The translations under genes and the position numbers were made by a program. The notes beneath the pieces are model-generated. The model was not told the origin of the DNA and did not search any database. It saw only the letters and a program-made list of their open reading frames with translations. Below are positions 21,830 to 59,422 of a stretch of DNA of 64,000 bases, piece by piece (within the stretch, counting starts at the first letter, position 1; every line of letters starts with the position of its first letter). Location: positions 62,001 to 126,000 of the IMG/VR virus record IMGVR_UViG_3300042391_000634; one strand, 5' to 3'.

Positions 21830-23581
21830 ATGAACTTTATAAATTTTGATACAATATACGTTAATGGTTCTTCATTAACTGCAGGTGGTGGTTTATCCGA
21901 TTTTGGGGTTAAACAAGAATATAAAAAACAACATGGGGTTGAGTGGGTTAATGAAAAAGACGTAACATATCCAAAATATATTGCAGACCATTTTGGGGTT
22001 AAATTGGTTCATGATGCGTTTTCAGGTTCTGGAGCACCAAGATTGGTTAGAAGAACATACGAACATATACAAAAAATTGGTTTAGATAATGCAAGAAAAA
22101 CATTGTTTTTATTTGAAATAACGGACCCACCTCACAGAGTTGATTTATATGTGGAAAAGGTAAATGATTACGTTATAACCAATGTAAGATATGATGATGA
22201 TAGAAATATTGGTTCAATATCATCCATACAAATGCAAGACGTTTTAACAAAGGACGGCATAAAATATGACCACGATTACTTTAAAGGTCAAATATCGGAT
22301 GAAGTTAAAGATTACTTATCAAAATATCACAATCCTATAACATACTTTAATAAGTTTGTCGGTGAACTTGTTGGTTTATTTAGTTTTTTAGAAGAAAATA
22401 ATATTGAATATTTTTATTGGTTTGATAATGATTCACTACAAATGCCGTTTAAAGATTTTTATGTTGATTATGATAAAAGAAGAAACTTAAAATTTGGTGG
22501 GTTTAACTGTGTTAACCAATTCTGCACATTCCAAAATATGAGAATATGTGACGAATTAAACGGTGCAAGTGGTGATATGCATCCTGGTTATTTTGGTAAC
22601 AAAAACTTTGCGGAAAAGGTCATTAAAATGATTGAGGGTAAATTAAAACCGACCTTATATGTATTTGGGGATTCCCATACTCAAACATTTGAAAATCATT
22701 TTAAATCGGATTTATCATGGGCTAAACAATATGTAAATCATTTGGGTGAAACACCAAAAAATTATCCTGATTTAATTGCCGAACATTATAATATTGATGT
22801 TGTAAATTATGGTATGGGAGGATGTTCTAATTATACAATATTTGAGTCATTCATAAACAATCATAAAAATATAAAACCAAAAGATTTGGTTGTATTTGGT
22901 TGGACATCAATTAGTAGATTTAGAGTTGCTAATAACGTTAATGACCTTGTCGACATTATTCCGTTTACACCACATCCAAAACAAAATGACGATGTTGAAA
23001 AGAAAACTACGGAACAAATAGCCTACAATAAAGAAACACATTCAGTTTGGTGGACCGAAATTGAAAATTTTGTAAAGATTATTAATCATACATTAAAAAA
23101 TAATAAAGTATTACATTGGACATGGGTTAAACCAGAAAACATTTTACCAACAAGAATATGGTCTCAAGAAAGTATTGATTTAAAACATTCATATATCTTC
23201 AATAATTGGAACGAGTCAGAACCAAAAGTTCAAGAATTAATGAGAAAAAATTGTGATTATTTAGTTAATCTTACTGAAAATATAGATTTAAATGAATTAA
23301 AAACATTTGCGGAAAATGATAAAAGAATAATTTTTTATAACATTGAATTATGTAATGAGGAAAAAAGACAATTTGTTTTTCATAATTTTAAAATAAAACA
23401 TTACCAATCAAGAAACTTTAAAAAAGATTGTTATCAACATTTCATTCCATATAAAAAATATCAAAGCATACTTGAAGAAACCAATGGTGCCGTTGATGAT
23501 CTACACATTGGTAGATTTGGACACGTAGAACTATCGAAAGATTTAATTAAAGAATTTGAAATGAAAAAACCCATCAATTAG
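21830..23581 (+). CDS. Tandem SGNH/GDSL-like domain protein
   Basis: Block I motifs NGSSLTAG and FGDSHTQ, and block V DMHP and DLHI. Start at MNFINF (21830), 11 nt after TATTTATA. Confidence 0.65.
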   Translation: MNFINFDTIYVNGSSLTAGGGLSDFGVKQEYKKQHGVEWVNEKDVTYPKYIADHFGVKLVHDAFSGSGAPRLVRRTYEHIQKIGLDNARKTLFLFEITDPPHRVDLYVEKVNDYVITNVRYDDDRNIGSISSIQMQDVLTKDGIKYDHDYFKGQISDEVKDYLSKYHNPITYFNKFVGELVGLFSFLEENNIEYFYWFDNDSLQMPFKDFYVDYDKRRNLKFGGFNCVNQFCTFQNMRICDELNGASGDMHPGYFGNKNFAEKVIKMIEGKLKPTLYVFGDSHTQTFENHFKSDLSWAKQYVNHLGETPKNYPDLIAEHYNIDVVNYGMGGCSNYTIFESFINNHKNIKPKDLVVFGWTSISRFRVANNVNDLVDIIPFTPHPKQNDDVEKKTTEQIAYNKETHSVWWTEIENFVKIINHTLKNNKVLHWTWVKPENILPTRIWSQESIDLKHSYIFNNWNESEPKVQELMRKNCDYLVNLTENIDLNELKTFAENDKRIIFYNIELCNEEKRQFVFHNFKIKHYQSRNFKKDCYQHFIPYKKYQSILEETNGAVDDLHIGRFGHVELSKDLIKEFEMKKPIN

Positions 23582-24239
23582 ATGGGTTTTTATTTATTCT
23601 ACCTAATTTCCATCCTGTTGGTATTATCCCCATCATTTTTATTTTTTTATTTTTAATACCATTATTAATCCATTGAGAACCATATTGTGAATTTGATTCG
23701 CCAATACCTTGTCCTTTTTTTGATGATTTTATTTTCTCAATTGTTTCAGGTTTATGTTTTTTACCTTCCCAAGAATAATATTCTTGTATTGGTTTCATTT
23801 CACCCATTTGATATCTTTTTTTATTTGATTCAGATATTTGTGTAGAACGTTTTTTTCGATATTCTTCATCTGTTTTTAATCTTTCACTATGTTTTAACCC
23901 AGCAGCTTGGGAACATTTAAATTGATGTTTTTGATTGTTAAACCCACCTGAACCACCAGGTTTCATATTATAACAATTAACATCGTAAACATATTCTTCG
24001 GTGACAATTTCCTTTTCTCTTTGAATTAAAATTTCTCTATTTTTACACCATTCAATTATTTCAATTTTAAAATTTTCTTCACCATATTTTCTAATCGCAT
24101 ATCTTAAACTTTTACCACTACCTAAATAACCATCTTTTAAATTACTTGTTGAATGCATACCAATATAAAACTTATTGTTAAGTAAATTGGTTGTTTTATA
24201 AATGAAGTGGTATTTTTTTAACTTAATTGAGTTCGACAT
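23574..24239 (-). mobile_element. Free-standing GIY-YIG homing endonuclease (Seg-like) with NUMOD3-like repeats
   Basis: FIYKTTNLLNNKFYIG...YLGSG...E...YN and WEGKKHKPETIEKI. Lies immediately downstream of the tmRNA. Confidence 0.9.
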
Positions 24240-24274: not shown

Positions 24275-24679
24275 GGTGGAGACGAGGGGAGTCGAACCCC
24301 TGTCCGATCCGCCGTACCATAAATGGACTACACGTTTATTCAATTAGTTCACAATTGACAAATATTTGGTTCCTATTTTGACATCGTAACCAATAACTGT
24401 GTCGAGTTCACTTTAAGGTAGCCCTCTGAACGAGACCTTTGACACATTTTAAGTGGTATCATCACTGTGGGGACTTCTGTTCCTAGGTTATATGTCCTTC
24501 GACCCGAGTGTAGTTTCGCCTTAGGCTACTGCTACAGTAGAAGTTGCGATTAAACCGCAAGCTTCCATGTTTGTATAAACGTTGTCGTTTAAATTTTACC
24601 ACCATAGATTTAAGTCATAGATGACATCTGACTACGTGCCCATTTACCATACCAACGCCCGTCAATTCCAGGCGTCCCC
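24275..24679 (-). ncRNA. ssrA: tmRNA
   Basis: 5' GGGGACGCCTGGAATTGAC pairs with 3' GGTTCGACTCCCCTCGTCTCCACC, including the G3.U70 alanine identity pair. Internal tag ORF AAC GAC AAC...GTA GCC TAA at 24589-24521. Confidence 0.95.
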
Positions 24680-26474: not shown

Positions 26475-27400
26475 AATAGGGCCTTAGGTTTTCATAGAGA
26501 ACAAGGTCATTTACCACCACTTTGTTTTTCTAAACAAAGAAAATAAAACTCTGAGAATACAAGTTTTAACAACCGACTTAGGAACATTATTTGTTTCTTT
26601 CCTTTTCCACGAACTTTTGATTCGTACCGATCAATGACGGTCAATTAGATTAACCAATCCTAAAGTCATCAGATACTCTTTTATTACTTATTACTCAACA
26701 AATCTGCCGACCTGTTTCAACCTTGCGGGTTTAGAGAACTTTCTTAAAAATCATATTGGGATTGAGTCCCTTTATGGCCGTGAACCTCTCACGACTAAGT
26801 AGTCACCTGTCTCCAATGACTGACGAACACTTTTTCAGTTTAATTATGATTTTTATATCGTAATAAAAATTTAGTTTCCGAATTAGGAAAGTAGTGGTTC
26901 GTCACCTAGCCAAGTTATCTTTTGAACAACTCGATACTAAACTACTCTCTGAAGTGTCCCCACCTCCATATTTTTGGTTTCCTTCGAAATTAAACCCTTG
27001 GTAGGATTTAGTCAAGGACACTAACAGCACCACCTGTTTTTTGTCATACCTTCCATCTTACGACGCTACGGTTTTAAGACCACCATTGTATTGAATCACG
27101 CAATTGTATAATCGGATAACTATACTTCTCACAAACTAATTCTATGGATTATTCTTATTGGTGTTCCCACCTCAACCAAACAACTCGGATTGCTTGGTCA
27201 TCTAACCATTTCGCTACGGAGTTACCCTCACTACTTCAGGTCAAATGATATTCCACTTGTCTACTCGAGATCCATTACTGAATCCGCAACTTACCCCAAC
27301 CAAGGGTTTGTCACTTTATCCCACTTTCATGGTTTATTTTATTGACTATAGACGGCCAATATTTTTATTCAAAGAACTTTATCTTTTGGGTTATTCACCC
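26448..27400 (-). ncRNA. Large (~900-950 nt) structured non-coding RNA, GOLLD-like candidate
   Basis: No credible ORF, GC above flanks, many hairpins (AACC-CGCAA-GGTT, GGGA-CTCAA-TCCC, GAGTTGTTC-AAAA-GATAACTT), own promoter and terminator, next to tRNAs. Family identity rests on size, context and recollection only. Confidence 0.65.
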
Positions 27401-27440
27401 TTCTTTTACAAAGATAAGAAATGTTTTCTAATATTCCAAA
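27368..27440 (-). promoter_or_regulatory. Bacteroidota promoter plus boxA-like antiterminator
   Basis: TTTG(27440-37)-N20-TATCTTTG(27416-09), then AGTTCTTTGAA at 27378-68. Confidence 0.75.
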
Positions 27441-27656
27441 TTATTTAGAAACTTTTTTAGATTTTTTTTCTTTTTTAATTTCATATGATCCACCCATGTC
27501 ATGACCAACTTCCACATTCTCTTTTGGAGATGGGGATGCTACACCTCTCCACTCTGATTTTGTTGTGTATTTCCATGTTGTACCAGCCATTTGATAAGCT
27601 TGTTTTTCGTCAACTCTGATGATATTTCCAGTTTTAGTATTTTTTAAACACTTCAT
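27441..27656 (-). CDS. Hypothetical protein
   Basis: 71-aa ORF MKCLKNTKTGNIIRV with TTTG-N19-TATATTAT upstream. Confidence 0.75.
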   Translation of the reverse strand: MKCLKNTKTGNIIRVDEKQAYQMAGTTWKYTTKSEWRGVASPSPKENVEVGHDMGGSYEIKKEKKSKKVSK

Positions 27657-27704
27657 ATTTTTTGTTTTTAATAATATAGGAAATTTTTGTTAAAAAACAA
27701 AATA

Positions 27705-27817
27705 ATCAATAGGAACAGTTCCTTCACTTCTGTCTTGTATCTCCGTAGCAGTCAGCACTATTGATATTTGATGGATGAAAAACATCTATTCTTCTTGCGG
27801 ACTTCCATCGGAGTCCC
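27705..27817 (-). ncRNA. Candidate structured intergenic RNA
   Basis: ATCAATAG/CTATTGAT (27705-12/27758-65) and GGACT/AGTCC stems in a GC-enriched gap. Confidence 0.35.
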
Positions 27818-27822
27818 ATATC

Positions 27823-28050
27823 TTACAAAAACTTATTTCGGTTTATTCTTGTCTCTTCAGCCTCTTTATACCAACGAATCCAAGTTAATGAAACATCAAC
27901 GGGGGCAAGTATCCAAGCCATTACTAAAACCATGATAGTATCTAATTCTGGTGAACCACCTGTTGGGTCGTTAGAATATCTTTTGTCTAAATTTTTAAAC
28001 AATTGATACAAACAATAAATAACACAAATAACATAATAACCTATAAACAT
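27823..28050 (-). CDS. Small two-TM membrane protein
   Basis: Two hydrophobic stretches separated by a DPTGGSPE linker. Confidence 0.7.
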   Translation of the reverse strand: MFIGYYVICVIYCLYQLFKNLDKRYSNDPTGGSPELDTIMVLVMAWILAPVDVSLTWIRWYKEAEETRINRNKFL

Positions 28051-28063
28051 AACTTTTAATTTT

Positions 28064-28414
28064 TTATTTCCAAAATAACGATATAATAATAATTGTGAAA
28101 GCCAACAGTAATTGAACTGATGTTTTCATTGTGAACAGTTGACCAAAATGATATGGATATAAAAATGATGCAATAAAAATACCTGTTACAAAAAATATAA
28201 ATCTATTACTCCACATTTCACCATTAAACGCCTTTACACCATAATGAGATGCTTTAATCCACAAGAATGTACATCCAACAGCAATTAAATAGGGCCACGG
28301 GGTCTTAATCCAATTTTCCATTTTAAATTGCCAATACATTATATACCAATGACCAACTGATCCTAATAGGAAAAGTGATATTGATGTAAGCAAATTAAAA
28401 ATTTGTGGTTTCAT
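28064..28414 (-). CDS. Four-TM small membrane protein (SMR/DMT-like size)
   Basis: 116 aa from MKPQIF with four hydrophobic helices. The upstream ORF extension overlaps tRNA-Glu and was discarded. Confidence 0.7.
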   Translation of the reverse strand: MKPQIFNLLTSISLFLLGSVGHWYIMYWQFKMENWIKTPWPYLIAVGCTFLWIKASHYGVKAFNGEMWSNRFIFFVTGIFIASFLYPYHFGQLFTMKTSVQLLLAFTIIIISLFWK

Positions 28415-28524: not shown

Positions 28525-28766
28525 AAATAATCACTCAAATGGGTATTTGTTATAATATCACAATTGTTGCGCTATACTCTGGTTAATTACTCCGTCTGTA
28601 TCCAACAGCTTTATGTTGGCTTATAATTGGCTACTTTATTATAACTCACATTTTTATTTGTGATTAAAAATCCTCGTCTTTCCGAGGTGCCAAACAACCT
28701 TAGTCTCAATCTACTCTTCCGATTGTTAATCGTGTAGTGGATCCTCCCCATTAGACTTTTGGTTCG

Positions 28767-28853: not shown

Positions 28854-28856
28854 ATT

Positions 28857-29045
28857 GACACCTTTATTTATCCAACTCACAGGTGTCTTAGCTGTCCCCT
28901 TTCGGGTTAGGAATAGACCATTGGGTTACTATATTTACCCCTTATAGTAGACGGTCAATCTAAATAGAACCTTGTCCTATCATCAGTTCCATATGGTCGT
29001 CAAACCACTTCTCTTCATATTGGACATACTATTCGGTGACTAACC
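28857..29045 (-). ncRNA. Candidate structured RNA between tRNA-CAT and tRNA-Ser
   Basis: GGTTAG/CTAACC and GAATAG/CTATTC close a ~140-nt multibranch; extra CCC-GAAA-GGG and GACACCT/AGGTGTC hairpins. Confidence 0.45.
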
Positions 29046-29053
29046 GAACCGTG

Positions 29054-29126
29054 TGGACCCGGAGGGGTATGATCCCCCGACCTCGACATTATGAGTGTCT
29101 TGCTCTACCAGCTGAGCTACAAGTCC
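29054..29126 (-). tRNA. tRNA with CAT anticodon (Ile2 or elongator Met)
   Basis: GGACTTG/CGGGTCC acceptor (G1-C72, so not initiator), GACA-CT CAT AA-TGTC, atypical T loop ATCATAC. Confidence 0.88.
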
Positions 29127-29129
29127 TAT

Positions 29130-29516
29130 TAGTCTTTTCCTTACCTCTTAATAATCACATTGCCATCCCGGTGTTACTGCCGGGTGCTTACCACTTGCGT
29201 GGAGTGATTATCACATTAATGTTTGATTCCAATCCAACTTAAATTGCACCATCCGATTCATTGATCTGGTTGACAAAGTCCTCGATTGGATTAGTCTCAA
29301 AAAGTTACAGGTTTTTTGTACCATCTATGTACATCATGACCGAAGTTTGGTTGGATTTACATCACGTCTCAGCAAACTTTACTCGGTGGTTACATTTTCG
29401 TATTGGGGTAATTATTCCCGACTTATAGTAACTCTACCCTCACCGCCCTACCTCGCGAGTCAGACGGATCTTTTGGGATTCATAGACAGTGGGGTTACAC
29501 CACCGTCGTCACCTGT
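29130..29516 (-). ncRNA. Candidate ~385-nt structured RNA between tRNA-Thr and tRNA-CAT
   Basis: ACAGGT/ACCTGT closes a 210-nt domain with GACGGTGG/CCACTGTC and AAGTTTG/CAAACTT stems. A 3' three-way junction has ATAATCAC/GTGATTAT, CCAC-GCAA-GTGG and CCCGG/CCGGG. Confidence 0.55.
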
Positions 29517-29518
29517 TG

Positions 29519-29590
29519 AGCCTCCACTCGGAATCGAACCAAGTTATCATGATTACAAGTCATGTGCATCGCCATCAATGCTTTAGAGGC
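29519..29590 (-). tRNA. tRNA-Thr(TGT)
   Basis: GCCTCTA/TGGAGGC acceptor, CATGA-CT TGT AA-TCATG, GGTTCGATTCC. Confidence 0.93.
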
Positions 29591-29606: not shown

Positions 29607-29659
29607 TGTCAAAGAACCACTTATTTCACAAAGATAATTAATAAATTCGGATATACAAA
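29607..29659 (-). promoter_or_regulatory. Bacteroidota promoter plus boxA-like element heading the tRNA operon
   Basis: TTTG(29659-56)-N19-TATCTTTG(29636-29), then GGTTCTTTGACA at 29618-07. Confidence 0.75.
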
Positions 29660-29728: not shown

Positions 29729-30511
29729 CTATTCTCCCCAATGTTTATCTCTAAGTTCATAGATATCAATTGGTTCACGTTTCATATGACTTCCTTGATT
29801 GTAAAAAGCACCTTTTTTCAAGAAACCACCTAAAAAGTTTCTTCTCATTCTGTTTGAGTTGTTAGCTTCCGACCCGTGTACACAATGTGAGTGTAATAAA
29901 ACCACTTGTCCTTTTTTTAGGATTCCTTCTATTTTACGGAAATCATGTCCTTCAGGCATGATACAAGGTTTACCTCTTTCATTTCTCCAAAAAGATGGGT
30001 TAGTTTTTGCTCTTTCTTCGTCAATCTCAATAGGTAACGTTTGTAATCTATGTGAACCCTCGTAGTTCCAAACTGACCCATTACCGTCGTCGTGATTGTC
30101 TAACGCTAATGCTGTATTAATAATTTCATTGTGTTTACAACCCGTGTAAAAGGCGTTTTGGTGCATATCTCTACCTAATTGTCCCGGTGGTTTAAAGTAT
30201 GCCCAACTTTGCATCCCAACAATTTCACCTTCCATTAAAAACTGACAAGCCTCAATTAATTTAGGATGAACATATAGTTTTGCAAGTTTATCGGATAATT
30301 TATGTGGATATGCAAATGGATCCCATTCACCCCACTCCTTACCATCGTCTGTTAACGTTCCTTTTCTCTCCTGACGTAAACGTTCAAGTTCGTCATTGAT
30401 TTCATCACATTCTTCTTCGGTTAAGAGTTCTAATGCTGTAAATCCTCGGTATCTCCAATCAAATGTCATTTGTTGAATTTCCAATTCTGTGAGATGTTTA
30501 AAATTTCCCAT
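29729..30511 (-). CDS. PhyH-family 2-oxoglutarate/Fe(II) dioxygenase
   Basis: YFKPPG...MHQN, ALALD...NG, GQVVLLHSHCVHGS..N.SNRMRR. Confidence 0.85.
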   Translation of the reverse strand: MGNFKHLTELEIQQMTFDWRYRGFTALELLTEEECDEINDELERLRQERKGTLTDDGKEWGEWDPFAYPHKLSDKLAKLYVHPKLIEACQFLMEGEIVGMQSWAYFKPPGQLGRDMHQNAFYTGCKHNEIINTALALDNHDDGNGSVWNYEGSHRLQTLPIEIDEERAKTNPSFWRNERGKPCIMPEGHDFRKIEGILKKGQVVLLHSHCVHGSEANNSNRMRRNFLGGFLKKGAFYNQGSHMKREPIDIYELRDKHWGE

Positions 30512-47704: not shown

Positions 47705-49717
47705 TTATTTTTTAGAAATTAATAATTTTTCGTCTTTATATTTCAAAATGTATTGTTCATTTTCTAAAATATTACCTTTTAATATTTCTTCACTTAAAAA
47801 ATCTTCACAAAGATTTTGTATAATACGTTTTAGTGGACGAGCACCATACTCTTCTTGTGAATTTAATTCGTAAATTCTATTAGTAACTGTTTTATCAAAA
47901 TTAATTTTATAATTTTTATCGGTTAATCTTTTATTTAATCTACCAACTTCAATATTAATAATTTTCTTTAATGTTTCATCATTTAAAGAGTTAAATAAAA
48001 TAACATCATCAACACGATTTAAAAACTCTGGATTGAATTGTTGTTTTAGTGCTTTTTGAATCATTGTTTTTCTAACCTCATATTGTTGTTCTTCACTTGA
48101 TGATGTTTTAAACCCAACACCCCCACCTAATTCAGATACTTTCTTAGCACCAACATTTGATGTCATGATAATAATCGTATTTGTGAAATTAATTTTTCTA
48201 CCGAATGAATCTGTTAAATGACCTTCATCTAAAATTTGAAGTAGAATATTAAAAACATCTTTATGAGCCTTCTCAATTTCATCGAATAAAATCACAGAGA
48301 ATGGGTTATTTTTAACTTTCTCAGTCAACTGACCTCCTTCATCATAACCAACATAACCAGGAGGAGAACCGATTAATTTTGATACATTATGTTTTTCCAT
48401 ATACTCACTCATATCCACACGAATAATTTTATCGGAGTCACCAAATAAAACCTCAGCAATTGATTTTGCTAAAAATGTTTTACCAACTCCCGTTGACCCT
48501 ATGAATATAAATGAACCAATTGGTTTATTCGTTTCTTTAATACCAACACGATTTCTTCTAATTGATTTTGAGATTGTTTTAATTGCCTCATCTTGACCTA
48601 TTACTTTTGCTGATAATATATCCTCAAGTTGTAATAACTTTTTAGTCTCTTTAGTATCGAGTTTAGTAATTGGAACTCCTGTCATATCTGTAACAATGTT
48701 ATATACATCATCTAAAGTAACTGGAGTTTTATTATCCTTTTGTTTGTTTGACCATTTTAATTTTTCATCGTCTAACTTAGTTGTTACTTTTTTCTCCTCA
48801 TCACGTAGTTTTGCCGCTTGTTCGTAATTTTGACTTTTAACAACTTGAACTTTTCTTTCTTTAATATTGTCAATTTCTTTTTTTAATTTTTCAATCGACT
48901 CAGGAATTTTAGATGAAACTCTTTTTTCGGAACCCAATTCATCTAATACATCGATTGCTTTATCTGGAAATTGTCTATCTGTAATGTAACGACCTGAAAG
49001 TTTAACAATTGTTTCTAATACACCTTCCTCATAACTTACTTTATGAAAGTCTTGATATGATGTGGTTAAGTTTTTAAGAATTTCTAAAGTTTCTTCTTCT
49101 GTTGGTTCATTCAATATTATTTTTTGAAAACGACGAACTAAAGCTGCATCTTTTTCAATATGTTTTTTAAACTCGTCAAAAGTTGTTGCTCCAATACATT
49201 GTAATTCCCCTCTTGCTAATGCTGGTTTTAAAATATTGGCGGCGTCCATGGCACCACTTGCATTACCAGCACCAACCATAGTATGTAATTCATCAATGAA
49301 GATGATTACATTAGGTGCCTCTTGTAATTCATTAATGATTGCTTTAATTCTCTCTTCAAATTGACCACGATACTTTGTGCCGGCAACTAATGAGGTTAAA
49401 TCTAACGACATAATACGTTTGTCAATAAGATTGGGAGGACAATCACCTTTGTAAATCATTAACGCTAATTTTTCAACTAACGCAGATTTACCAACTCCCG
49501 CTTCTCCAACAATAACGGCGTTGTTTTTCTTTTTACGAGAAAGAATTTGTGCAATTCTTTTTACCTCCTTGTCTCTACCGACAACGGGATCAATTTTACC
49601 TTCTTCGGCCATCTTAATAAGATCACGAGAGAAGTTATCTAAAATTGGTGTGTTAGAACCCTTTCTAACTTTTTTTGGGTTTGTGGTTGGACCATCTTCA
49701 AAAAAATCTACTGACAT
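47705..49717 (-). CDS. clpC: ClpC-type Hsp100 AAA+ chaperone lacking the N-terminal domain
   Basis: Two AAA modules (GEAGVGKS, GSTGVGKT), short UVR M-domain NYEQAAKLRD, VGF ClpP-docking loop; only ~22 aa precede LDNFSRDL. Confidence 0.9.
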   Translation of the reverse strand: MSVDFFEDGPTTNPKKVRKGSNTPILDNFSRDLIKMAEEGKIDPVVGRDKEVKRIAQILSRKKKNNAVIVGEAGVGKSALVEKLALMIYKGDCPPNLIDKRIMSLDLTSLVAGTKYRGQFEERIKAIINELQEAPNVIIFIDELHTMVGAGNASGAMDAANILKPALARGELQCIGATTFDEFKKHIEKDAALVRRFQKIILNEPTEEETLEILKNLTTSYQDFHKVSYEEGVLETIVKLSGRYITDRQFPDKAIDVLDELGSEKRVSSKIPESIEKLKKEIDNIKERKVQVVKSQNYEQAAKLRDEEKKVTTKLDDEKLKWSNKQKDNKTPVTLDDVYNIVTDMTGVPITKLDTKETKKLLQLEDILSAKVIGQDEAIKTISKSIRRNRVGIKETNKPIGSFIFIGSTGVGKTFLAKSIAEVLFGDSDKIIRVDMSEYMEKHNVSKLIGSPPGYVGYDEGGQLTEKVKNNPFSVILFDEIEKAHKDVFNILLQILDEGHLTDSFGRKINFTNTIIIMTSNVGAKKVSELGGGVGFKTSSSEEQQYEVRKTMIQKALKQQFNPEFLNRVDDVILFNSLNDETLKKIINIEVGRLNKRLTDKNYKINFDKTVTNRIYELNSQEEYGARPLKRIIQNLCEDFLSEEILKGNILENEQYILKYKDEKLLISKK

Positions 49718-55762: not shown

Positions 55763-57538
55763 ATGAATACCAGAGCAGAACAATTAATGGAGTATGCTAA
55801 GATTATTAAAGATACCCCATACGCCCTTAGAACATACCTTCAAACATTTGATAATACACAGAAGAAGTATGTTCCAATGGATTTGTTTGAGGACCAAATT
55901 CAATTAATTAAGGATTACGAAGACTACAACGAAAACATCACAAGAAAGTATAGACAGGCCGGCGTTACAACAGTAACAGCTGCATGGTTATCAAAAAAAT
56001 TACAATTAGCAAAACCCGATAATCCTGAGAGAGTTCTACTTATTGCGAACAAACGTGATACTGCGGTGGAGATGGCTAATAAGGTTAGACATTTCTTAGA
56101 ACAATGGCCTGATTGGTTAAATGTTGGGTTCTCACCTGATAAAAACTCAGAGAGTAGATTTAGATTAAATAACGGTTGTGAGGTTAAGGCGGTTGCAACA
56201 TCGGCGGATGCCCTTCGTGGTTATACACCTACCATACTTGTATTTGATGAGGCTGCATATATTGAAGCGGGAGATGATTTTTGGGCTGCATCTATGGCGT
56301 CCCTATCAACGGGTGGTAAGATTATTCTTATTTCCACACCAAATGGTTATGACGCTATCTATTACGGTGTTTACGACCAAGCATTACGTGGAATCAATGA
56401 TTTCCATATAACAGATTTAAGGTGGTTTAAAGACCCTCGTTATACTAAAGATTTACGTTGGATTAAATGTCAAGATATCTGTCACTACATGTTGAATAGA
56501 GAACAGTATAACGACGATGAGGTTGTTTTATATGACTTTGACATGAAAGAATATCTAAAACTTTTAGAGGACGGTTATAAACCGTTTTCATCTTGGTTTG
56601 AGTCAATGTCTAAGAAATTTAAATACGATAGACGTAAGATTGCTCAAGAATTGGAATGTGATTTCTTAGGTTCAGGAGATGGTGTTATCCCTGGTGATAT
56701 TCAAGAGAATATTGCTAAGAACATGATTAGAGAACCTATTGAGAAATACATGCAGGCCACTTTTTGGCAATGGAAAGAACCAATTATCGGTCATCGTTAT
56801 ATTATGGGTGTGGATGTGAGTAGAGGAGATAGTGAAGATTTTTCAGCAATATCAATTATCGATTTTGACGATAGAGAACAAGTTGCAGAATATATCGGTA
56901 AGATACCTCCCGATGACTTAGCTGCGGTTGCATATAAATGGGCTATCTTATATGGTAACGCATTTATCGTAACGGATATTACAGGTGGAATGGGAGTTGC
57001 CACATCAAGAAAATTGACTGAGTTAAATTATAAAAACGTTTATATTGAGGGAATTAATACGCAAAATATTTGGGACTATAATGCTAAGGCGATGGAGAAA
57101 ATACCAGGTCTTAACTTTAATAACAAAAGAACTCAAATTGTTGCTGCGTTTGAAGAACAACTTAGAAAGGGGTTTATTGTTAGATCTGCAAGATTATTAA
57201 ATGAACTTAATACGTTTGTTTATATGAATGGTAGACCTGACCATATGAAAGGAACACATGATGATGCCATTATGGGTATGTCAATGGCATTATATGCTGC
57301 CGATGTATCATTTAATTTATTACAAAAGAATGAAAACGCAAACAAAGCAATGTTAGATTCTTGGACTATGACTGAAAGATCATATGAGACAAGTAAATCA
57401 TTCTATTCATATGGTACTGCATTTGATCAGATAGGGTCGATGGGAACAGATAACAATAGTTTATATTATCAAGATAACTCAAACGTAAGTAAACAAGCAT
57501 ATCAAGAGAATTCATGGTTATTCGGTAAGCGTAAATAA
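55763..57538 (+). CDS. terL: Terminase large subunit (T4 gp17-like)
   Basis: KYRQAGVTT Walker A, LVFDEAAYI Walker B, ISTPNG, QELEC.FLGS, MGVDVSRG and HDDAIMG nuclease motifs. Confidence 0.97.
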   Translation: MNTRAEQLMEYAKIIKDTPYALRTYLQTFDNTQKKYVPMDLFEDQIQLIKDYEDYNENITRKYRQAGVTTVTAAWLSKKLQLAKPDNPERVLLIANKRDTAVEMANKVRHFLEQWPDWLNVGFSPDKNSESRFRLNNGCEVKAVATSADALRGYTPTILVFDEAAYIEAGDDFWAASMASLSTGGKIILISTPNGYDAIYYGVYDQALRGINDFHITDLRWFKDPRYTKDLRWIKCQDICHYMLNREQYNDDEVVLYDFDMKEYLKLLEDGYKPFSSWFESMSKKFKYDRRKIAQELECDFLGSGDGVIPGDIQENIAKNMIREPIEKYMQATFWQWKEPIIGHRYIMGVDVSRGDSEDFSAISIIDFDDREQVAEYIGKIPPDDLAAVAYKWAILYGNAFIVTDITGGMGVATSRKLTELNYKNVYIEGINTQNIWDYNAKAMEKIPGLNFNNKRTQIVAAFEEQLRKGFIVRSARLLNELNTFVYMNGRPDHMKGTHDDAIMGMSMALYAADVSFNLLQKNENANKAMLDSWTMTERSYETSKSFYSYGTAFDQIGSMGTDNNSLYYQDNSNVSKQAYQENSWLFGKRK

Positions 57539-57592: not shown

Positions 57593-59422
57593 ATGGCAAA
57601 CCAAAATTTAACTGTATTTCAGAAATTAACAAAGATGTTTGGTTATCCGGGAAAACCTCAGGTAACACAAGCGCCTTCATTTAATTTTAATAAAGACGAA
57701 TTATTAAAGACAGACAGTAAAGAAGAATATGAGAAAGCAATGTTACAGGCTCAACAGAGTCAGTATGTTGCAGACAAATGGACTAAATTAGATCAGTCTC
57801 TTTATAATCAATCGGTTTATTATGAACCAAATAGATTGGCGGCATATTACGATTATGAGGCAATGGAGTTTACTCCAGAGGTTTCGGCGGCATTAGACAT
57901 ATACTCGGAGGAGTCCACCACAATGTCAGAAAAGGGTCAAATTTTAACAATATTTTCTGATTCGGATAGAATTAAAGAAATATTAGAGGACCTGTTTAAC
58001 AATAGATTAGATGTTAATACAAACTTACAAATGTGGACTAGAGGTGTTTGTAAGTATGGTGATAATTTTGTTTATTTAAAATTAGACCCTGAAAAGGGTA
58101 TTGTTGGATGTCAACAATTACCGAATATTGAAATAGAAAGACTAGAAGGTGCTGCAGCTAAAGGAACAACTCAAAATAGAGACACAAAGATTCCATCAAG
58201 AGAATTAAGGTTTCAATGGAAAAATAAAGACTTGGAATTTCAAGCATGGGAAATTGCTCATTTTAGATTATTAGGTGATGATAGAAAACTTCCTTATGGA
58301 ACTTCTATGTTGGATAAGATTAGAAGAATTTGGAAACAACTTTTACTTGCTGAGGATGCAATGTTAATTTACAGAACATCGAGAGCACCTGAAAGACGTG
58401 TATTCAAAGTATTCGTTGGTAATATGGACGATAAGGATATTGAATCTTACGTTCAACGTGTTGCTAACAAATTTAAAAGAGACCAAATTTCAGATCCTCG
58501 TAATGGTCAAGTTGATATGAGGTATAATCAGATGGCGGTTGACCAGGATTATTTTATTCCTGTTCGTGACCCATCACAAACTAGCCCAATTGAAACATTA
58601 CCTGGAGCACAAAACTTAGGTGAGATTGCTGATATTGAATATATTCAAAAGAAAATGTTAGCGGCGTTACGTATACCTAAAGCTTTCTTAGGATTTGAAG
58701 AAGTTGTTGGTGATGGTAAGAGTTTAGCATTAATGGATATTCGTTTTGCCAGAACTATTAACAGAATACAAAAATCATTAATACAGGAATTAAATAAAAT
58801 TGCTCTAATTCAATTATACCTTTTAGGTATGGAAGATGAGTTAAATAATTTCTCATTATCATTAACTAATCCGTCGGCACAATCTGATTTATTACGTCTT
58901 GAACAATGGAAAGAAAAGATTACACTTTACAAAGATGCAACATCAGACCAATCACAAGTTGGTATCTTACCTGTATCACATACATGGGCTAAGAAGAACA
59001 TTCTTGGATTTAGTGATTCTGAGGTTATGTTAGATTTACAACAACAACGTTTAGAACGTGCATTAGGATTTGAATTAACGAATACTCAGAATGTTATTAA
59101 ACGTTCAGGTGTGTTTGATGAAGTGGATGCTAAGTATGGTATTCCTGAAGAGGATAGAGAAAAAGCAATGGAAGCTGCAGGTGCAGAAGCCGGTGGAGAT
59201 ATGGGTGGCGGAATGGATATGGGTGGAGGATCACCAGCGGCACCAGCACCAACAGGTGGAGGTGAAGAACCTTTAAGTGAGTCTACCAAATCAAAGAAAT
59301 CAAAAATATTAGGTATGTTGGGTGAAGAAAAGGAAGATTTTAATGTTCTATTTGATATGGAAAGAGCACAACAGAATATTTATGAGATAGAGACTAAAAT
59401 AAATGATATTTTAAACGATTAA
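57593..59422 (+). CDS. gp20: Portal protein (T4 gp20-like)
   Basis: AEDAMLIYRTSRAPERRVFKVFVGN, QDYFIPVR, ETLPGAQNLGEIADIEY...ALRIPK. Confidence 0.96.
   Translation: MANQNLTVFQKLTKMFGYPGKPQVTQAPSFNFNKDELLKTDSKEEYEKAMLQAQQSQYVADKWTKLDQSLYNQSVYYEPNRLAAYYDYEAMEFTPEVSAALDIYSEESTTMSEKGQILTIFSDSDRIKEILEDLFNNRLDVNTNLQMWTRGVCKYGDNFVYLKLDPEKGIVGCQQLPNIEIERLEGAAAKGTTQNRDTKIPSRELRFQWKNKDLEFQAWEIAHFRLLGDDRKLPYGTSMLDKIRRIWKQLLLAEDAMLIYRTSRAPERRVFKVFVGNMDDKDIESYVQRVANKFKRDQISDPRNGQVDMRYNQMAVDQDYFIPVRDPSQTSPIETLPGAQNLGEIADIEYIQKKMLAALRIPKAFLGFEEVVGDGKSLALMDIRFARTINRIQKSLIQELNKIALIQLYLLGMEDELNNFSLSLTNPSAQSDLLRLEQWKEKITLYKDATSDQSQVGILPVSHTWAKKNILGFSDSEVMLDLQQQRLERALGFELTNTQNVIKRSGVFDEVDAKYGIPEEDREKAMEAAGAEAGGDMGGGMDMGGGSPAAPAPTGGGEEPLSESTKSKKSKILGMLGEEKEDFNVLFDMERAQQNIYEIETKINDILND

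What the first reader, a model, noticed from the sequence alone, without database searches (positions are those of the whole stretch)
29130..29516. Elaborate ~385-nt structured spacer between tRNA-Thr and tRNA-CAT
Seen: far longer and more paired than a normal tRNA spacer. It has a 210-nt domain closed by ACAGGT/ACCTGT with at least four internal stems, and a compact three-way junction with a GCAA tetraloop in the tRNA sense. I could not match RNase P, group I intron or known small-ribozyme cores. Inference: one or two unclassified ncRNAs released by tRNA processing.
Basis: partly seen in the sequence, partly recalled or inferred. Interest (0 to 1): 0.6.

Follow-up and report, generated by a model that had tools for sequence, protein, structure and literature searches.

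The report
New structured RNAs inside phage tRNA array
The long "spacer" between two tRNA genes of a 336-kb freshwater phage is three separate, conserved, folded RNA genes of unknown function that occupy tRNA-like slots in the tRNA arrays of many related phages and match no described RNA family.

Summary
On the minus strand, 391 nt (29517-29127) separate tRNA-Thr(UGU) from tRNA-Met(CAU) in a complete 335,630-bp phage genome.

The stretch is three independent modules, not one spacer:
- M1: 29517-29305, 213 nt here and 174-192 nt in most relatives.
- M2: 29304-29219.
- M3: 29218-29127.

Relatives carry a tRNA-Asn exactly between M2 and M3. Each module also occurs alone, 0-6 nt from tRNAs on both sides.

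Compensatory base changes support all three folds:
- M1: 89 distinct sequences, 21 of 36 pairs compensatory.
- M3: 23 sequences, 8 of 20 pairs.
- M2: 24 sequences, 5 of 25 pairs.

Folding energy of the single sequence is not above chance, and the GCAA tetraloop is not conserved.

Nothing in Rfam 15, GenBank phages or phage T4's tRNA-cluster RNAs matches. The modules are not coding, not tRNA-like, and not part of the GOLLD RNA 2.3 kb downstream.

Most likely they are stable small RNAs cut out by RNase Z and RNase P, or started at a Bacteroidota-type promoter. The closest analogue is T4 rnaC/rnaD. Expression, processing and function are untested.

The parts
29629..29659 (-). Promoter-like site of Bacteroidota type (TTTG, 19 nt, TATCTTTG), about 32 nt upstream of tRNA-Thr. 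It follows the terminator of the PhyH-like gene at 29708-29683.
   Evidence: Pattern TTTG-N18-21-TAnnTTTG gives 7 matches in the window against 3.4 expected; two of them lie just upstream of tRNA-Thr and of GOLLD. Terminator. In relatives the same -7 motif lies 3-5 nt before M1 when no tRNA precedes it. The consensus itself is recalled from the literature.
29518..29590 (-). tRNA-Thr(UGU) with no encoded CCA (N73-C, then M1). Its 3' processing would create the 5' end of M1.
   Evidence: ARAGORN and Rfam tRNA; junction sequence.
29305..29517 (-). Module M1, a multi-arm structured RNA. Helices: P1 29516-29511/29312-29307; P2 hairpin 29506-29486; tentative Px 29484-29481/29338-29335; P3 29477-29475/29439-29437 enclosing hairpin P3a; P4 29432-29428/29393-29389 enclosing P4a 29419-29417/29407-29405; P5 29387-29382/29344-29339; P6 29333-29329/29321-29317. 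Junction strands are nearly invariant.
   Evidence: 89 distinct homologues: 98.5% of cells paired; 21 of 36 pairs with compensatory change against 7.8 +/- 1.2 in shuffles (0/500); slid controls 3-9. An independent MAFFT alignment of 35 sequences gives 14 of 36. P3a covariation. Px. Coordinates.
29339..29387 (-). Expanded form of the variable arm P5 of M1. It is about 35 nt longer than in most homologues and explains why M1 is 213 nt here.
   Evidence: Alignments A1 and A4. Only 8 of 89 variants are 213 nt; the rest are 174-192 nt.
29219..29304 (-). Module M2, an irregular hairpin of about 85 nt with conserved internal loops.
   Evidence: 24 distinct sequences: 99.3% of cells paired; 5 of 25 pairs compensatory; covariation score above all 500 shuffles; slid controls 0-1. 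Occurs without M1 between tRNAs: Met<2>M2<3>Asp, Thr<3>M2<6>Asp, and directly after tRNA-Thr in L032.
29127..29218 (-). Module M3, a three-way junction: a 10-bp closing helix, a variable hairpin (GCAA loop in this window), and a conserved hairpin whose loop ends in the invariant GUAACA. A single-stranded 3' tail follows.
   Evidence: 23 distinct sequences: 99.8% of cells paired; 8 of 20 pairs compensatory against 4.5 +/- 1.1 (0/500). Found in 12 further contigs with other array orders, 1-6 nt from tRNAs on both sides.
29127..29150 (-). Purine-rich 3' tail of M3 (core AAGAGGTAAGGAAAAGACTAA). It runs straight into the next tRNA, so RNase P cleavage would define its 3' end.
   Evidence: The 21-nt core AAGAGGTAAGGAAAAGACTAA is identical in 14 of 15 M3 copies collected without using it as the search pattern; L316 reads TAGGG for TAAGG. 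M3<0>Met and M3<0>Leu(tag) junctions.
29053..29126 (-). tRNA-Met(CAU). Its 5' maturation would release the 3' end of M3.
   Evidence: ARAGORN and Rfam.

Best explanation
The 'spacer' is three separate non-coding RNA genes, M1, M2 and M3. They sit in the slots of a phage tRNA array exactly as tRNA genes do.

The array is transcribed on the minus strand from a Bacteroidota-type promoter upstream of tRNA-Thr. The enzymes that mature the tRNAs also cut out the modules. RNase Z cuts after the discriminator of the CCA-less upstream tRNA and gives the module its 5' end. RNase P cuts at the 5' end of the downstream tRNA and gives the module its 3' end.

In phages where M1 is first in the unit, the same 5' end is made by transcription initiation instead.

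In this phage no tRNA lies between the modules. The primary product would therefore be one 391-nt M1-M2-M3 RNA, possibly cut again at the A/U-rich linkers.

The products are folded, stable small RNAs that act in trans during infection. They most likely bind a protein or another RNA of the tRNA or translation apparatus through their invariant junction and loop nucleotides. The basis for that guess is that they travel with tRNAs, a tmRNA and a GOLLD RNA.

Shown: the modules exist, are independent, are conserved with compensatory changes, and abut tRNAs. Inferred: transcription, the processing enzymes, stability. Speculative: the target.
For: Modularity:
- tRNA-Asn(GTT) sits exactly between M2 and M3 in L003, L010, L087 and L099.
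- M1 occurs alone as Thr<0>M1<3-5>Asp, Leu<2>M1<8>Tyr and tmRNA<1>M1<11>Glu.
- M2 occurs alone as Met<2>M2<3>Asp.
- M3 occurs alone as Gly<1>M3<2>Ala and Val<1>M3<3>Tyr.

Structure under selection:
- M1: 21 of 36 pairs compensatory in 89 sequences; 14 of 36 on an unfitted alignment.
- M3: 8 of 20 pairs.
- M2: 5 of 25 pairs.
- Slid-partner controls collapse to 18-48% pairing.

Defined ends:
- M1 begins AAC-A-R-GUG one base after N73-C of Thr, Met, Glu, Leu or tmRNA genes, or 3-5 nt after a TAnnTTTG -7 motif.
- In five variants M1 stands alone as tmRNA, terminator hairpin, M1, U-run, protein gene.
- The tRNAs lack encoded CCA.

Selection independent of tRNAs: this complete genome keeps only 4 tRNAs and a tmRNA yet keeps every module. 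Relatives carry 18-23 tRNAs in the fetched loci.

Precedent: the T4 record annotates tRNA-Arg, 1 nt, rnaD (119 nt), 6 nt, rnaC (139 nt) as small stable RNAs in its tRNA cluster.
Against:
- Folding energy of the single sequence is not better than shuffles.
- All homologues come from one environmental phage lineage and its neighbours, so relatedness inflates some covariation counts. The A8 alignment is fitted to the model.
- Nothing in the sequence identifies a target or partner.
- For 37 of 88 M1 variants ARAGORN finds no tRNA directly upstream. Some are promoter-proximal; others follow an odd tRNA-like gene that ARAGORN misses.
Confidence: 0.7

Rival explanations
1. The modules are cis-acting parts of the tRNA precursor. 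They would be folded spacers that help or order RNase P/Z cleavage, or protect the precursor, and would be discarded afterwards.
For: They lie between tRNAs with no gaps. The invariant tail of M3 is always the 5' leader of the next tRNA.
Against: Most tRNAs in the same arrays are separated by only 1-10 nt and need no such element. The same module precedes or follows different tRNAs. M1 also stands alone with its own promoter-like motif and a U-run, away from any downstream tRNA. The strong sequence conservation of loops and junctions exceeds what a passive spacer needs.
Confidence: 0.12
2. M1, or another module, is a new catalytic RNA. It could be a self-cleaving ribozyme that cuts at its own 5' end and so frees the upstream tRNA, or a small RNA that takes part in tRNA processing.
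For: M1 starts at a fixed nucleotide directly after the upstream tRNA. It has a complex multi-helix junction with nearly invariant junction strands, as ribozymes and riboswitches do.
Against: No known ribozyme, RNase P or intron model scores even at E <= 10. When M1 follows a promoter it has the same 5' end without any upstream RNA to cut. A 2',3'-cyclic phosphate would block CCA addition to the tRNA.
Confidence: 0.06
3. The modules are cis-regulatory elements, such as a riboswitch or attenuator, controlling downstream genes.
For: In five variants the 3' strand of M1's P1 is followed by a U-run and then a protein gene.
Against: In the large majority of contexts the next gene is another RNA: M2 in 43 of 88, a tRNA in 12 of 88. 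There is no separate expression platform. M2 and M3 are always followed by tRNAs.
Confidence: 0.04
4. The stretch is decayed tRNA genes or a DNA-level mobile element (MITE-like or intron remnant) with no RNA function.
For: This phage has lost most tRNAs of its relatives. tRNA-Asn is precisely present or absent between M2 and M3. A GIY-YIG endonuclease-like gene lies near the array.
Against: ARAGORN and the Rfam tRNA model find nothing tRNA-like. Substitutions are compensatory at the RNA level. Each module is single-copy per genome and always on the tRNA strand.
Confidence: 0.03
5. The stretch is the variable 5' domain of the GOLLD RNA, with tRNAs in the GOLLD linker.
For: A GOLLD 3' domain lies downstream on the same strand at 26949-26548 (290 bits). 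The literature notes tRNAs in GOLLD linkers (10.1101/2024.12.08.627333, read).
Against: The GOLLD 5' domain is directly upstream of the 3' domain. Window 27137-27350 matches the stretch between a tRNA and the GOLLD 3' domain of an unrelated 635-kb phage, and that phage has no M1. GOLLD has its own promoter-like site at 27440-27409. Three tRNAs and three small ORFs lie in between.
Confidence: 0.02
6. The stretch encodes a small protein.
For: A 97-codon stop-free frame exists on the opposite strand in this window.
Against: That frame overlaps tRNA-Thr antisense. Across 89 M1 variants the longest stop-free stretch has a median of 38 codons, lies in inconsistent frames, and module lengths differ by non-multiples of three.
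Confidence: 0.01

Closest known systems
Phage T4 rnaC and rnaD (species 1 and species 2 small stable RNAs in the tRNA gene cluster)
   Same: Non-tRNA RNAs of 119 and 139 nt encoded on the tRNA strand, 1 and 6 nt from the neighbouring RNA gene. The T4 cluster also holds a GIY-YIG endonuclease gene. Here a GIY-YIG-like gene lies about 5 kb downstream, next to the tmRNA. Function is still unknown in both cases. From my own knowledge, the T4 RNAs are matured from the tRNA precursor.
   Different: No sequence similarity by nhmmer: no hit for M1 or M2, and for M3 only a chance-level hit (E = 0.078, on the strand opposite rnaC). T4 rnaC carries a T-arm-like GGTTCGAAT hairpin, which M1-M3 lack. M1 is larger and multi-armed. 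The host phylum and phage lineage differ.
GOLLD (RF02032) and ROOL large structured phage RNAs found near tRNA islands
   Same: Phage-encoded, elaborately folded, of unknown function, and next to tRNA islands (10.1101/2024.12.08.627333). A GOLLD RNA is in the same array region here and in relatives.
   Different: No match to either model. M1-M3 are 85-213 nt rather than 580-800 nt. They are separate units bounded by tRNAs. M1 is absent from another GOLLD-bearing huge phage.
Bacterial sRNAs derived from tRNA-operon spacers (E. coli 3'ETS-leuZ and ITS-derived fragments); recalled from the literature, not tested here
   Same: Functional RNA excised from the transcribed spacer of a tRNA operon as a by-product of tRNA maturation.
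   Different: Those are short, little-structured base-pairing sponges released by RNase E. The modules here are highly structured, are conserved as cassettes that move between array positions, and sometimes have their own promoter.

Membership tests
Phage tRNA-cluster small stable RNAs (T4 rnaC/rnaD type) | Non-tRNA RNA gene inside a phage tRNA cluster, on the same strand, abutting tRNA genes | tested here: met
   Gaps of 0-6 nt to tRNAs or tmRNA in many arrays. T4 layout.
Phage tRNA-cluster small stable RNAs (T4 rnaC/rnaD type) | Sequence or structure homology to rnaC or rnaD | tested here: not met
   nhmmer of the M1, M2 and M3 profiles against the T4 cluster: no hit for M1 or M2; for M3 only E = 0.078, on the strand opposite rnaC, and E = 1.2.
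Phage tRNA-cluster small stable RNAs (T4 rnaC/rnaD type) | Accumulates as a discrete stable RNA matured from the tRNA precursor | not testable with these tools
GOLLD RNA (RF02032) | Match to the covariance model, or contiguity with the GOLLD 5' domain | tested here: not met
   The GOLLD hit is at 26548-26949 only. The 5' domain maps to about 26950-27400. M1 is absent from the GOLLD-bearing LR745206.
tRNA / tRNA-like (RF00005, ARAGORN) | Cloverleaf with a T-arm, detected by the tRNA models | tested here: not met
   No tRNA call or sub-threshold Rfam tRNA hit within 29127-29517.
Known ribozymes, RNase P RNA, group I/II introns, riboswitches (Rfam 15) | Match to any of 4227 covariance models | tested here: not met
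   No hit at E <= 10 inside the spacer. None at gathering score in 13 related loci.
Self-cleaving ribozyme (any class) | Site-specific self-scission | not testable with these tools
   Needs in vitro transcription.
Protein-coding small ORF | Conserved open frame with codon-wise substitution | tested here: not met
   Median longest stop-free stretch 38 codons, inconsistent frames, indels not in threes.

The most novel reading that the evidence does not exclude
M1 is a new class of functional RNA with a specific biochemical activity. It could be a ribozyme or a tight binder or decoy that lets huge phages of Bacteroidota take over or protect tRNA and translation functions, for example by blocking a host tRNA-targeting defence nuclease or processing the array itself. 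On this reading M2 and M3 are further members of a hidden repertoire of 'non-tRNA cassettes' in phage tRNA arrays. The ~30-nt motif shared by M1 and a differently built element in sister phages (TAGAGTTAC..AAG..GGAGTAATTACCC) would be the active or binding site.
Probability: 0.12. Interest if true: 0.85.

Novelty: new variant of a known kind. Interest (0 to 1): 0.6.

Why it matters
Phage tRNA arrays are usually read as lists of tRNAs with meaningless spacers. Here the 'spacers' are conserved, independently shuffled RNA genes, and a phage keeps them even after losing most of its tRNAs. M1 has about 40 base pairs, 21 of them with compensatory changes, and invariant junction strands. That gives it the hallmarks of RNAs with specific biochemical functions.

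Together with GOLLD and tmRNA in the same region, the modules point to a larger RNA toolkit in huge phages than is annotated. They also give the 50-year-old puzzle of T4 rnaC/rnaD new, structurally richer relatives-by-analogy to test.

In practical terms, three new covariance models could be added to annotation pipelines for viral metagenomes.

Tried and rejected
- Folding energy against shuffles: not significant on either strand, so it cannot support the claim.
- Rfam at gathering score and at E <= 10: nothing in the spacer.
- BLAST of the spacer against 50,697 GenBank phage records: no match. The 3.3-kb region matched only tRNAs and a GOLLD 5' piece.
It was replaced by longer patterns.
- Scan of one genome per prokaryote species: a single 2.3-kb contig of a Methylococcaceae metagenome bin. 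I take it for a mis-binned phage fragment, not host evidence.
- Search for tertiary pairs by column statistics: swamped by phylogenetic signal. Only one extra helix, Px, survived a stack filter, and I keep it as tentative.
- Homology to T4 rnaC/rnaD: none.
- Part of GOLLD: rejected.
- Coding: rejected.
- Anticodon-loop mimicry of tRNA-Thr by the P2 loop of M1: rejected by eye, because the UGU is not conserved in alignment A4.
- Literature searches found no description of such modules. The T4 genome review (PMC150520) is not held.

Full report
**Setting.** The window is bases 62001-126000 of a 335,630-bp IMG/VR virus record rated 100% complete. It has about 30% G+C. It encodes a large terminase at 55763-57538 and a portal protein at 57593-59422.

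On the minus strand the RNA genes lie in this order:
- tRNA-Thr(UGU), 29590-29518
- the stretch in question
- tRNA-Met(CAU), 29126-29053
- tRNA-Ser(UGA), 28853-28766
- tRNA-Glu(UUC), 28524-28452
- a GOLLD RNA, 26949-26548, 290 bits
- a tmRNA, 24679-24275

These four tRNAs and the tmRNA are the only ones in the whole genome.

**Observation.** The stretch between tRNA-Thr and tRNA-Met is 29517-29127, 391 nt. That fold is no more stable than shuffled sequence: z = -0.47 on the minus strand and -1.0 on the plus strand. A single sequence therefore proves nothing, and the case rests on relatives.

**Relatives.**
- The PhyH-like dioxygenase gene just upstream retrieved 80 related loci. About a dozen carry the same region.
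- DNA patterns taken from conserved pieces then found 48 viral contigs, 83 metagenome contigs and one 2.3-kb contig of a metagenome bin.
- Later patterns found further contigs holding M2 or M3 only.
- In all there are at least 89 distinct M1 sequences, about 48 M2 and 23 or more M3.

**The spacer is three modules.** An alignment of the Thr-to-next-tRNA intervals and feature maps show three units:
- M1, 29517-29305
- M2, 29304-29219
- M3, 29218-29127

The evidence that they are separate:
- In L003, L010, L087 and L099 a tRNA-Asn(GTT) sits exactly between M2 and M3, with gaps of -2 and 0 nt.
- M1 occurs alone between tRNA-Thr and tRNA-Asp (L005, L026, L258), between tRNA-Leu and tRNA-Tyr (L216), and between tmRNA and tRNA-Glu (L268).
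- M2 occurs alone as Met<2>M2<3>Asp (L387, L391), as Thr<3>M2<6>Asp (L378), and directly after tRNA-Thr in L032.
- M3 occurs in a dozen arrays with quite different gene orders, as Gly<1>M3<2>Ala, Val<1>M3<3>Tyr and Glu<4-6>M3<3>Gln.
- In L101, M3 lies 1.7 kb from M2.
- All copies lie on the tRNA strand, and each module is single-copy in this genome.

**Structure of M1.**
- RNAalifold on 17 and on 35 MAFFT-aligned sequences gives the same fold.
- On the 35-sequence alignment, 98.6% of cells pair. 14 of 36 pairs have changes on both sides, against 5.8 +/- 1.1 in shuffles (0 of 500). Slid-partner controls give 32-48% pairing and 2-4 such pairs.
- With a covariance model, 89 distinct sequences were aligned. 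This gives 98.5% paired and 21 of 36 pairs compensatory, against 7.8 +/- 1.2 in shuffles (0 of 500) and 3-9 in slid controls. This alignment is fitted to the model, so it leans towards the fold.
- The fold is a closing helix P1 with five arms, two of which contain inner hairpins (P3a; P4a).
- A further four-pair helix between two junction strands (Px) has three invariant pairs and one that covaries: A-U 51, G-U 18, G-C 15, U-G 3, U-A 1. I keep it as tentative.
- Arm P5 varies in length. The 213-nt form in this window is shared by only 8 of 89 variants.
- The junction strands are nearly invariant. That pattern is typical of RNAs with a defined tertiary fold.

**Structure of M2 and M3.**
- M2, 24 distinct sequences: 99.3% paired; 5 of 25 pairs compensatory; cells changed and covariation score above all 500 shuffles; slid controls 0-1. 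Its sequence is very conserved, so its fold is the least tested of the three.
- M3 was weakly supported within the close clade. With the wider set of 23 distinct sequences it gives 99.8% paired and 8 of 20 pairs compensatory, against 4.5 +/- 1.1 (0 of 500), with slid controls at 1-2.
- M3 is a three-way junction with three parts. There is a 10-bp closing helix. There is a second hairpin whose loop always ends in GUAACA.
- A purine-rich single-stranded tail of about 22 nt runs straight into the next tRNA. Its 21-nt core is identical in 14 of the 15 copies found without using it as the query. The later copies were selected by that tail, so they say nothing about its conservation.

**Ends and transcription.**
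- Whatever RNA gene precedes M1, the junction is the same: discriminator, C, then AAC-A-R-GUG. The preceding genes include several unrelated tRNA-Thr, a tRNA-Met with a C1/A72 mismatch, Glu, Leu, an odd tRNA-like gene and tmRNA.
- The tRNAs here do not encode CCA. By established knowledge such precursors are cut by RNase Z after the discriminator. That cut would create the M1 5' end.
- Where no tRNA precedes, M1 lies 3-5 nt after TATCTTTG or TATATTTG.
- That motif, with TTTG about 19 nt upstream, is the -7/-33 promoter consensus of Bacteroidota (TAnnTTTG and TTTG). The consensus is from my knowledge of the literature.
- The full pattern occurs 7 times in the window against 3.4 expected. Two copies lie just upstream of tRNA-Thr (29659-29629) and of GOLLD (27440-27409).
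- M1 therefore has the same 5' end whether it is made by initiation or by tRNA 3' processing.
- In five variants M1 stands alone: tmRNA, terminator hairpin, M1, a run of 7-9 U, then a protein gene.
- The 3' ends of M2 and M3 coincide with the 5' ends of tRNAs, which is where RNase P cuts.
- In this phage nothing separates the three modules. The expected product is one 391-nt RNA unless another nuclease cuts the A/U-rich linkers.
- All of this section is inference from sequence.

**Exclusions.**
- No Rfam 15 family matches the spacer even at E <= 10. None matches the homologous regions of 13 loci.
- The spacer has no BLAST match in 50,697 GenBank phage records.
- It is not coding and not tRNA-like.
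- It is not part of GOLLD. Window 27137-27350 matches the stretch that, in the unrelated 635-kb phage LR745206, lies between a tRNA and its GOLLD 3' domain. The GOLLD 5' domain is therefore next to the 3' domain.
- That phage has no M1. Neither do three further relatives, one of them a complete 202-kb genome.
- Between tRNA-Glu and GOLLD there are three small ORFs.

**Closest known.** The T4 record annotates two small stable RNAs of unknown function in its tRNA cluster, rnaD (119 nt) and rnaC (139 nt). They lie 1 and 6 nt from the neighbouring RNA genes, and the cluster also contains a GIY-YIG endonuclease gene. Here a GIY-YIG-like ORF lies next to the tmRNA. The layout is the same, but the sequences are unrelated. 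The modules work like T4 rnaC/rnaD in genomic logic without being members of those families. GOLLD and ROOL share the phage and tRNA-island setting but are much larger and unrelated. I found no paper describing such modules.

**Function.** This is the weak part.

Arguments for a trans-acting role:
- invariant loops and junctions
- independent inheritance of each module
- retention in a phage that kept only four tRNAs, while relatives carry 18-23 in the fetched loci
- a stand-alone M1 gene in some phages

A protein or RNA partner in the tRNA or translation field is my best guess because of the company the modules keep. A purely cis role, catalysis, or regulation cannot be excluded and are listed as rivals.

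One further hint. A differently built element of about 170 nt lies between tRNA-Asp and tRNA-Arg or tRNA-Gly in sister phages. It shares only a 30-nt motif with M1: the P4/P4a region, TAGAGTTAC..AAG..GGAGTAATTACCC. That motif may be a functional site.

**Verdict.** These are new RNA families in a known genomic niche, and their function is open.

Noticed in passing
window 26548-26949 (-), probably extending to about 27403: GOLLD RNA (RF02032, 290 bits). It has a promoter-like TTTG-N20-TATCTTTG at 27440-27409 and a terminator-like hairpin at 26474-26453, which suggests a transcript of about 930 nt. The 5' domain (27137-27350) is 75% identical to the region upstream of the GOLLD 3' domain in the 635-kb phage LR745206.
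   Followed up: partly
window 28854-29052 (-): The 199-nt tRNA-Met to tRNA-Ser spacer is another conserved module ('M4'). 14 distinct homologues of 191-198 nt give an RNAalifold fold with 41 pairs, 5 of them with compensatory changes.
   Followed up: partly
window 28525-28765 (-): The 241-nt tRNA-Ser to tRNA-Glu spacer holds two separately conserved pieces (positions 1-94 and 99-240). They occur in different combinations in relatives. Structure not analysed.
   Followed up: no
window 24275-24679 (-) and 23574-24239 (-): Phage-encoded tmRNA (tag ATSTVAVA) directly followed by a GIY-YIG (SegE-like) endonuclease-like ORF. This echoes segB inside the T4 tRNA cluster.
   Followed up: no
window 27441-28410 (-): Three small ORFs lie between tRNA-Glu and GOLLD: about 115 aa and 75 aa, both hydrophobic, and 71 aa, basic. 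The 156-aa ORF listed by the tool overlaps tRNA-Glu and probably starts later.
   Followed up: no
whole genome G000; window 29629-29659 and 27409-27440: Many genes are preceded by TTTG..TAnnTTTG, the promoter type of Bacteroidota. This points to a host in that phylum. The only prokaryote-genome hit, a 2.3-kb contig in a Methylococcaceae bin (L284), is probably a mis-binned phage fragment.
   Followed up: partly
L371/L369 (G001), L373, L375, L378, L380: Sister phages carry an element of about 170 nt between tRNA-Asp and tRNA-Arg or tRNA-Gly. It is closed by GUUGUUUC/GAAACAAC and shares only the ~30-nt P4/P4a motif with M1. The covariance model scores it 19.9 bits.
   Followed up: partly
L274, L313, L328, L329, L349, L318, L312, L282, L289: about 75 nt directly upstream of M1: A tRNA-like gene with a normal T-arm (AAGGTTCGATTCCTT) but an unusual body precedes M1 and is missed by ARAGORN. 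It accounts for part of the 37 M1 copies with no tRNA called upstream.
   Followed up: no
window 29219/29218 versus L003, L010, L087, L099: tRNA-Asn(GTT) is present or absent to the nucleotide between M2 and M3. Only two flanking bases differ between the two states, as if tRNA genes and modules are exchanged as cassettes. This genome keeps 4 tRNAs while relatives have 18-23 in the fetched loci.
   Followed up: partly
window 29127-29150 (-): The invariant M3 tail holds two Shine-Dalgarno-like purine blocks (AGAGG, AAGGA). This is odd for a presumed Bacteroidota host, where SD pairing is little used. No partner sequence was found.
   Followed up: no
window 29729-30511 (-) and 47705-49717 (-): A PhyH-family dioxygenase gene directly upstream of the array is 80-100% identical in 80 related contigs, most of which lack the array at that place. 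An FtsH-like ATP-dependent protease is also encoded.
   Followed up: no
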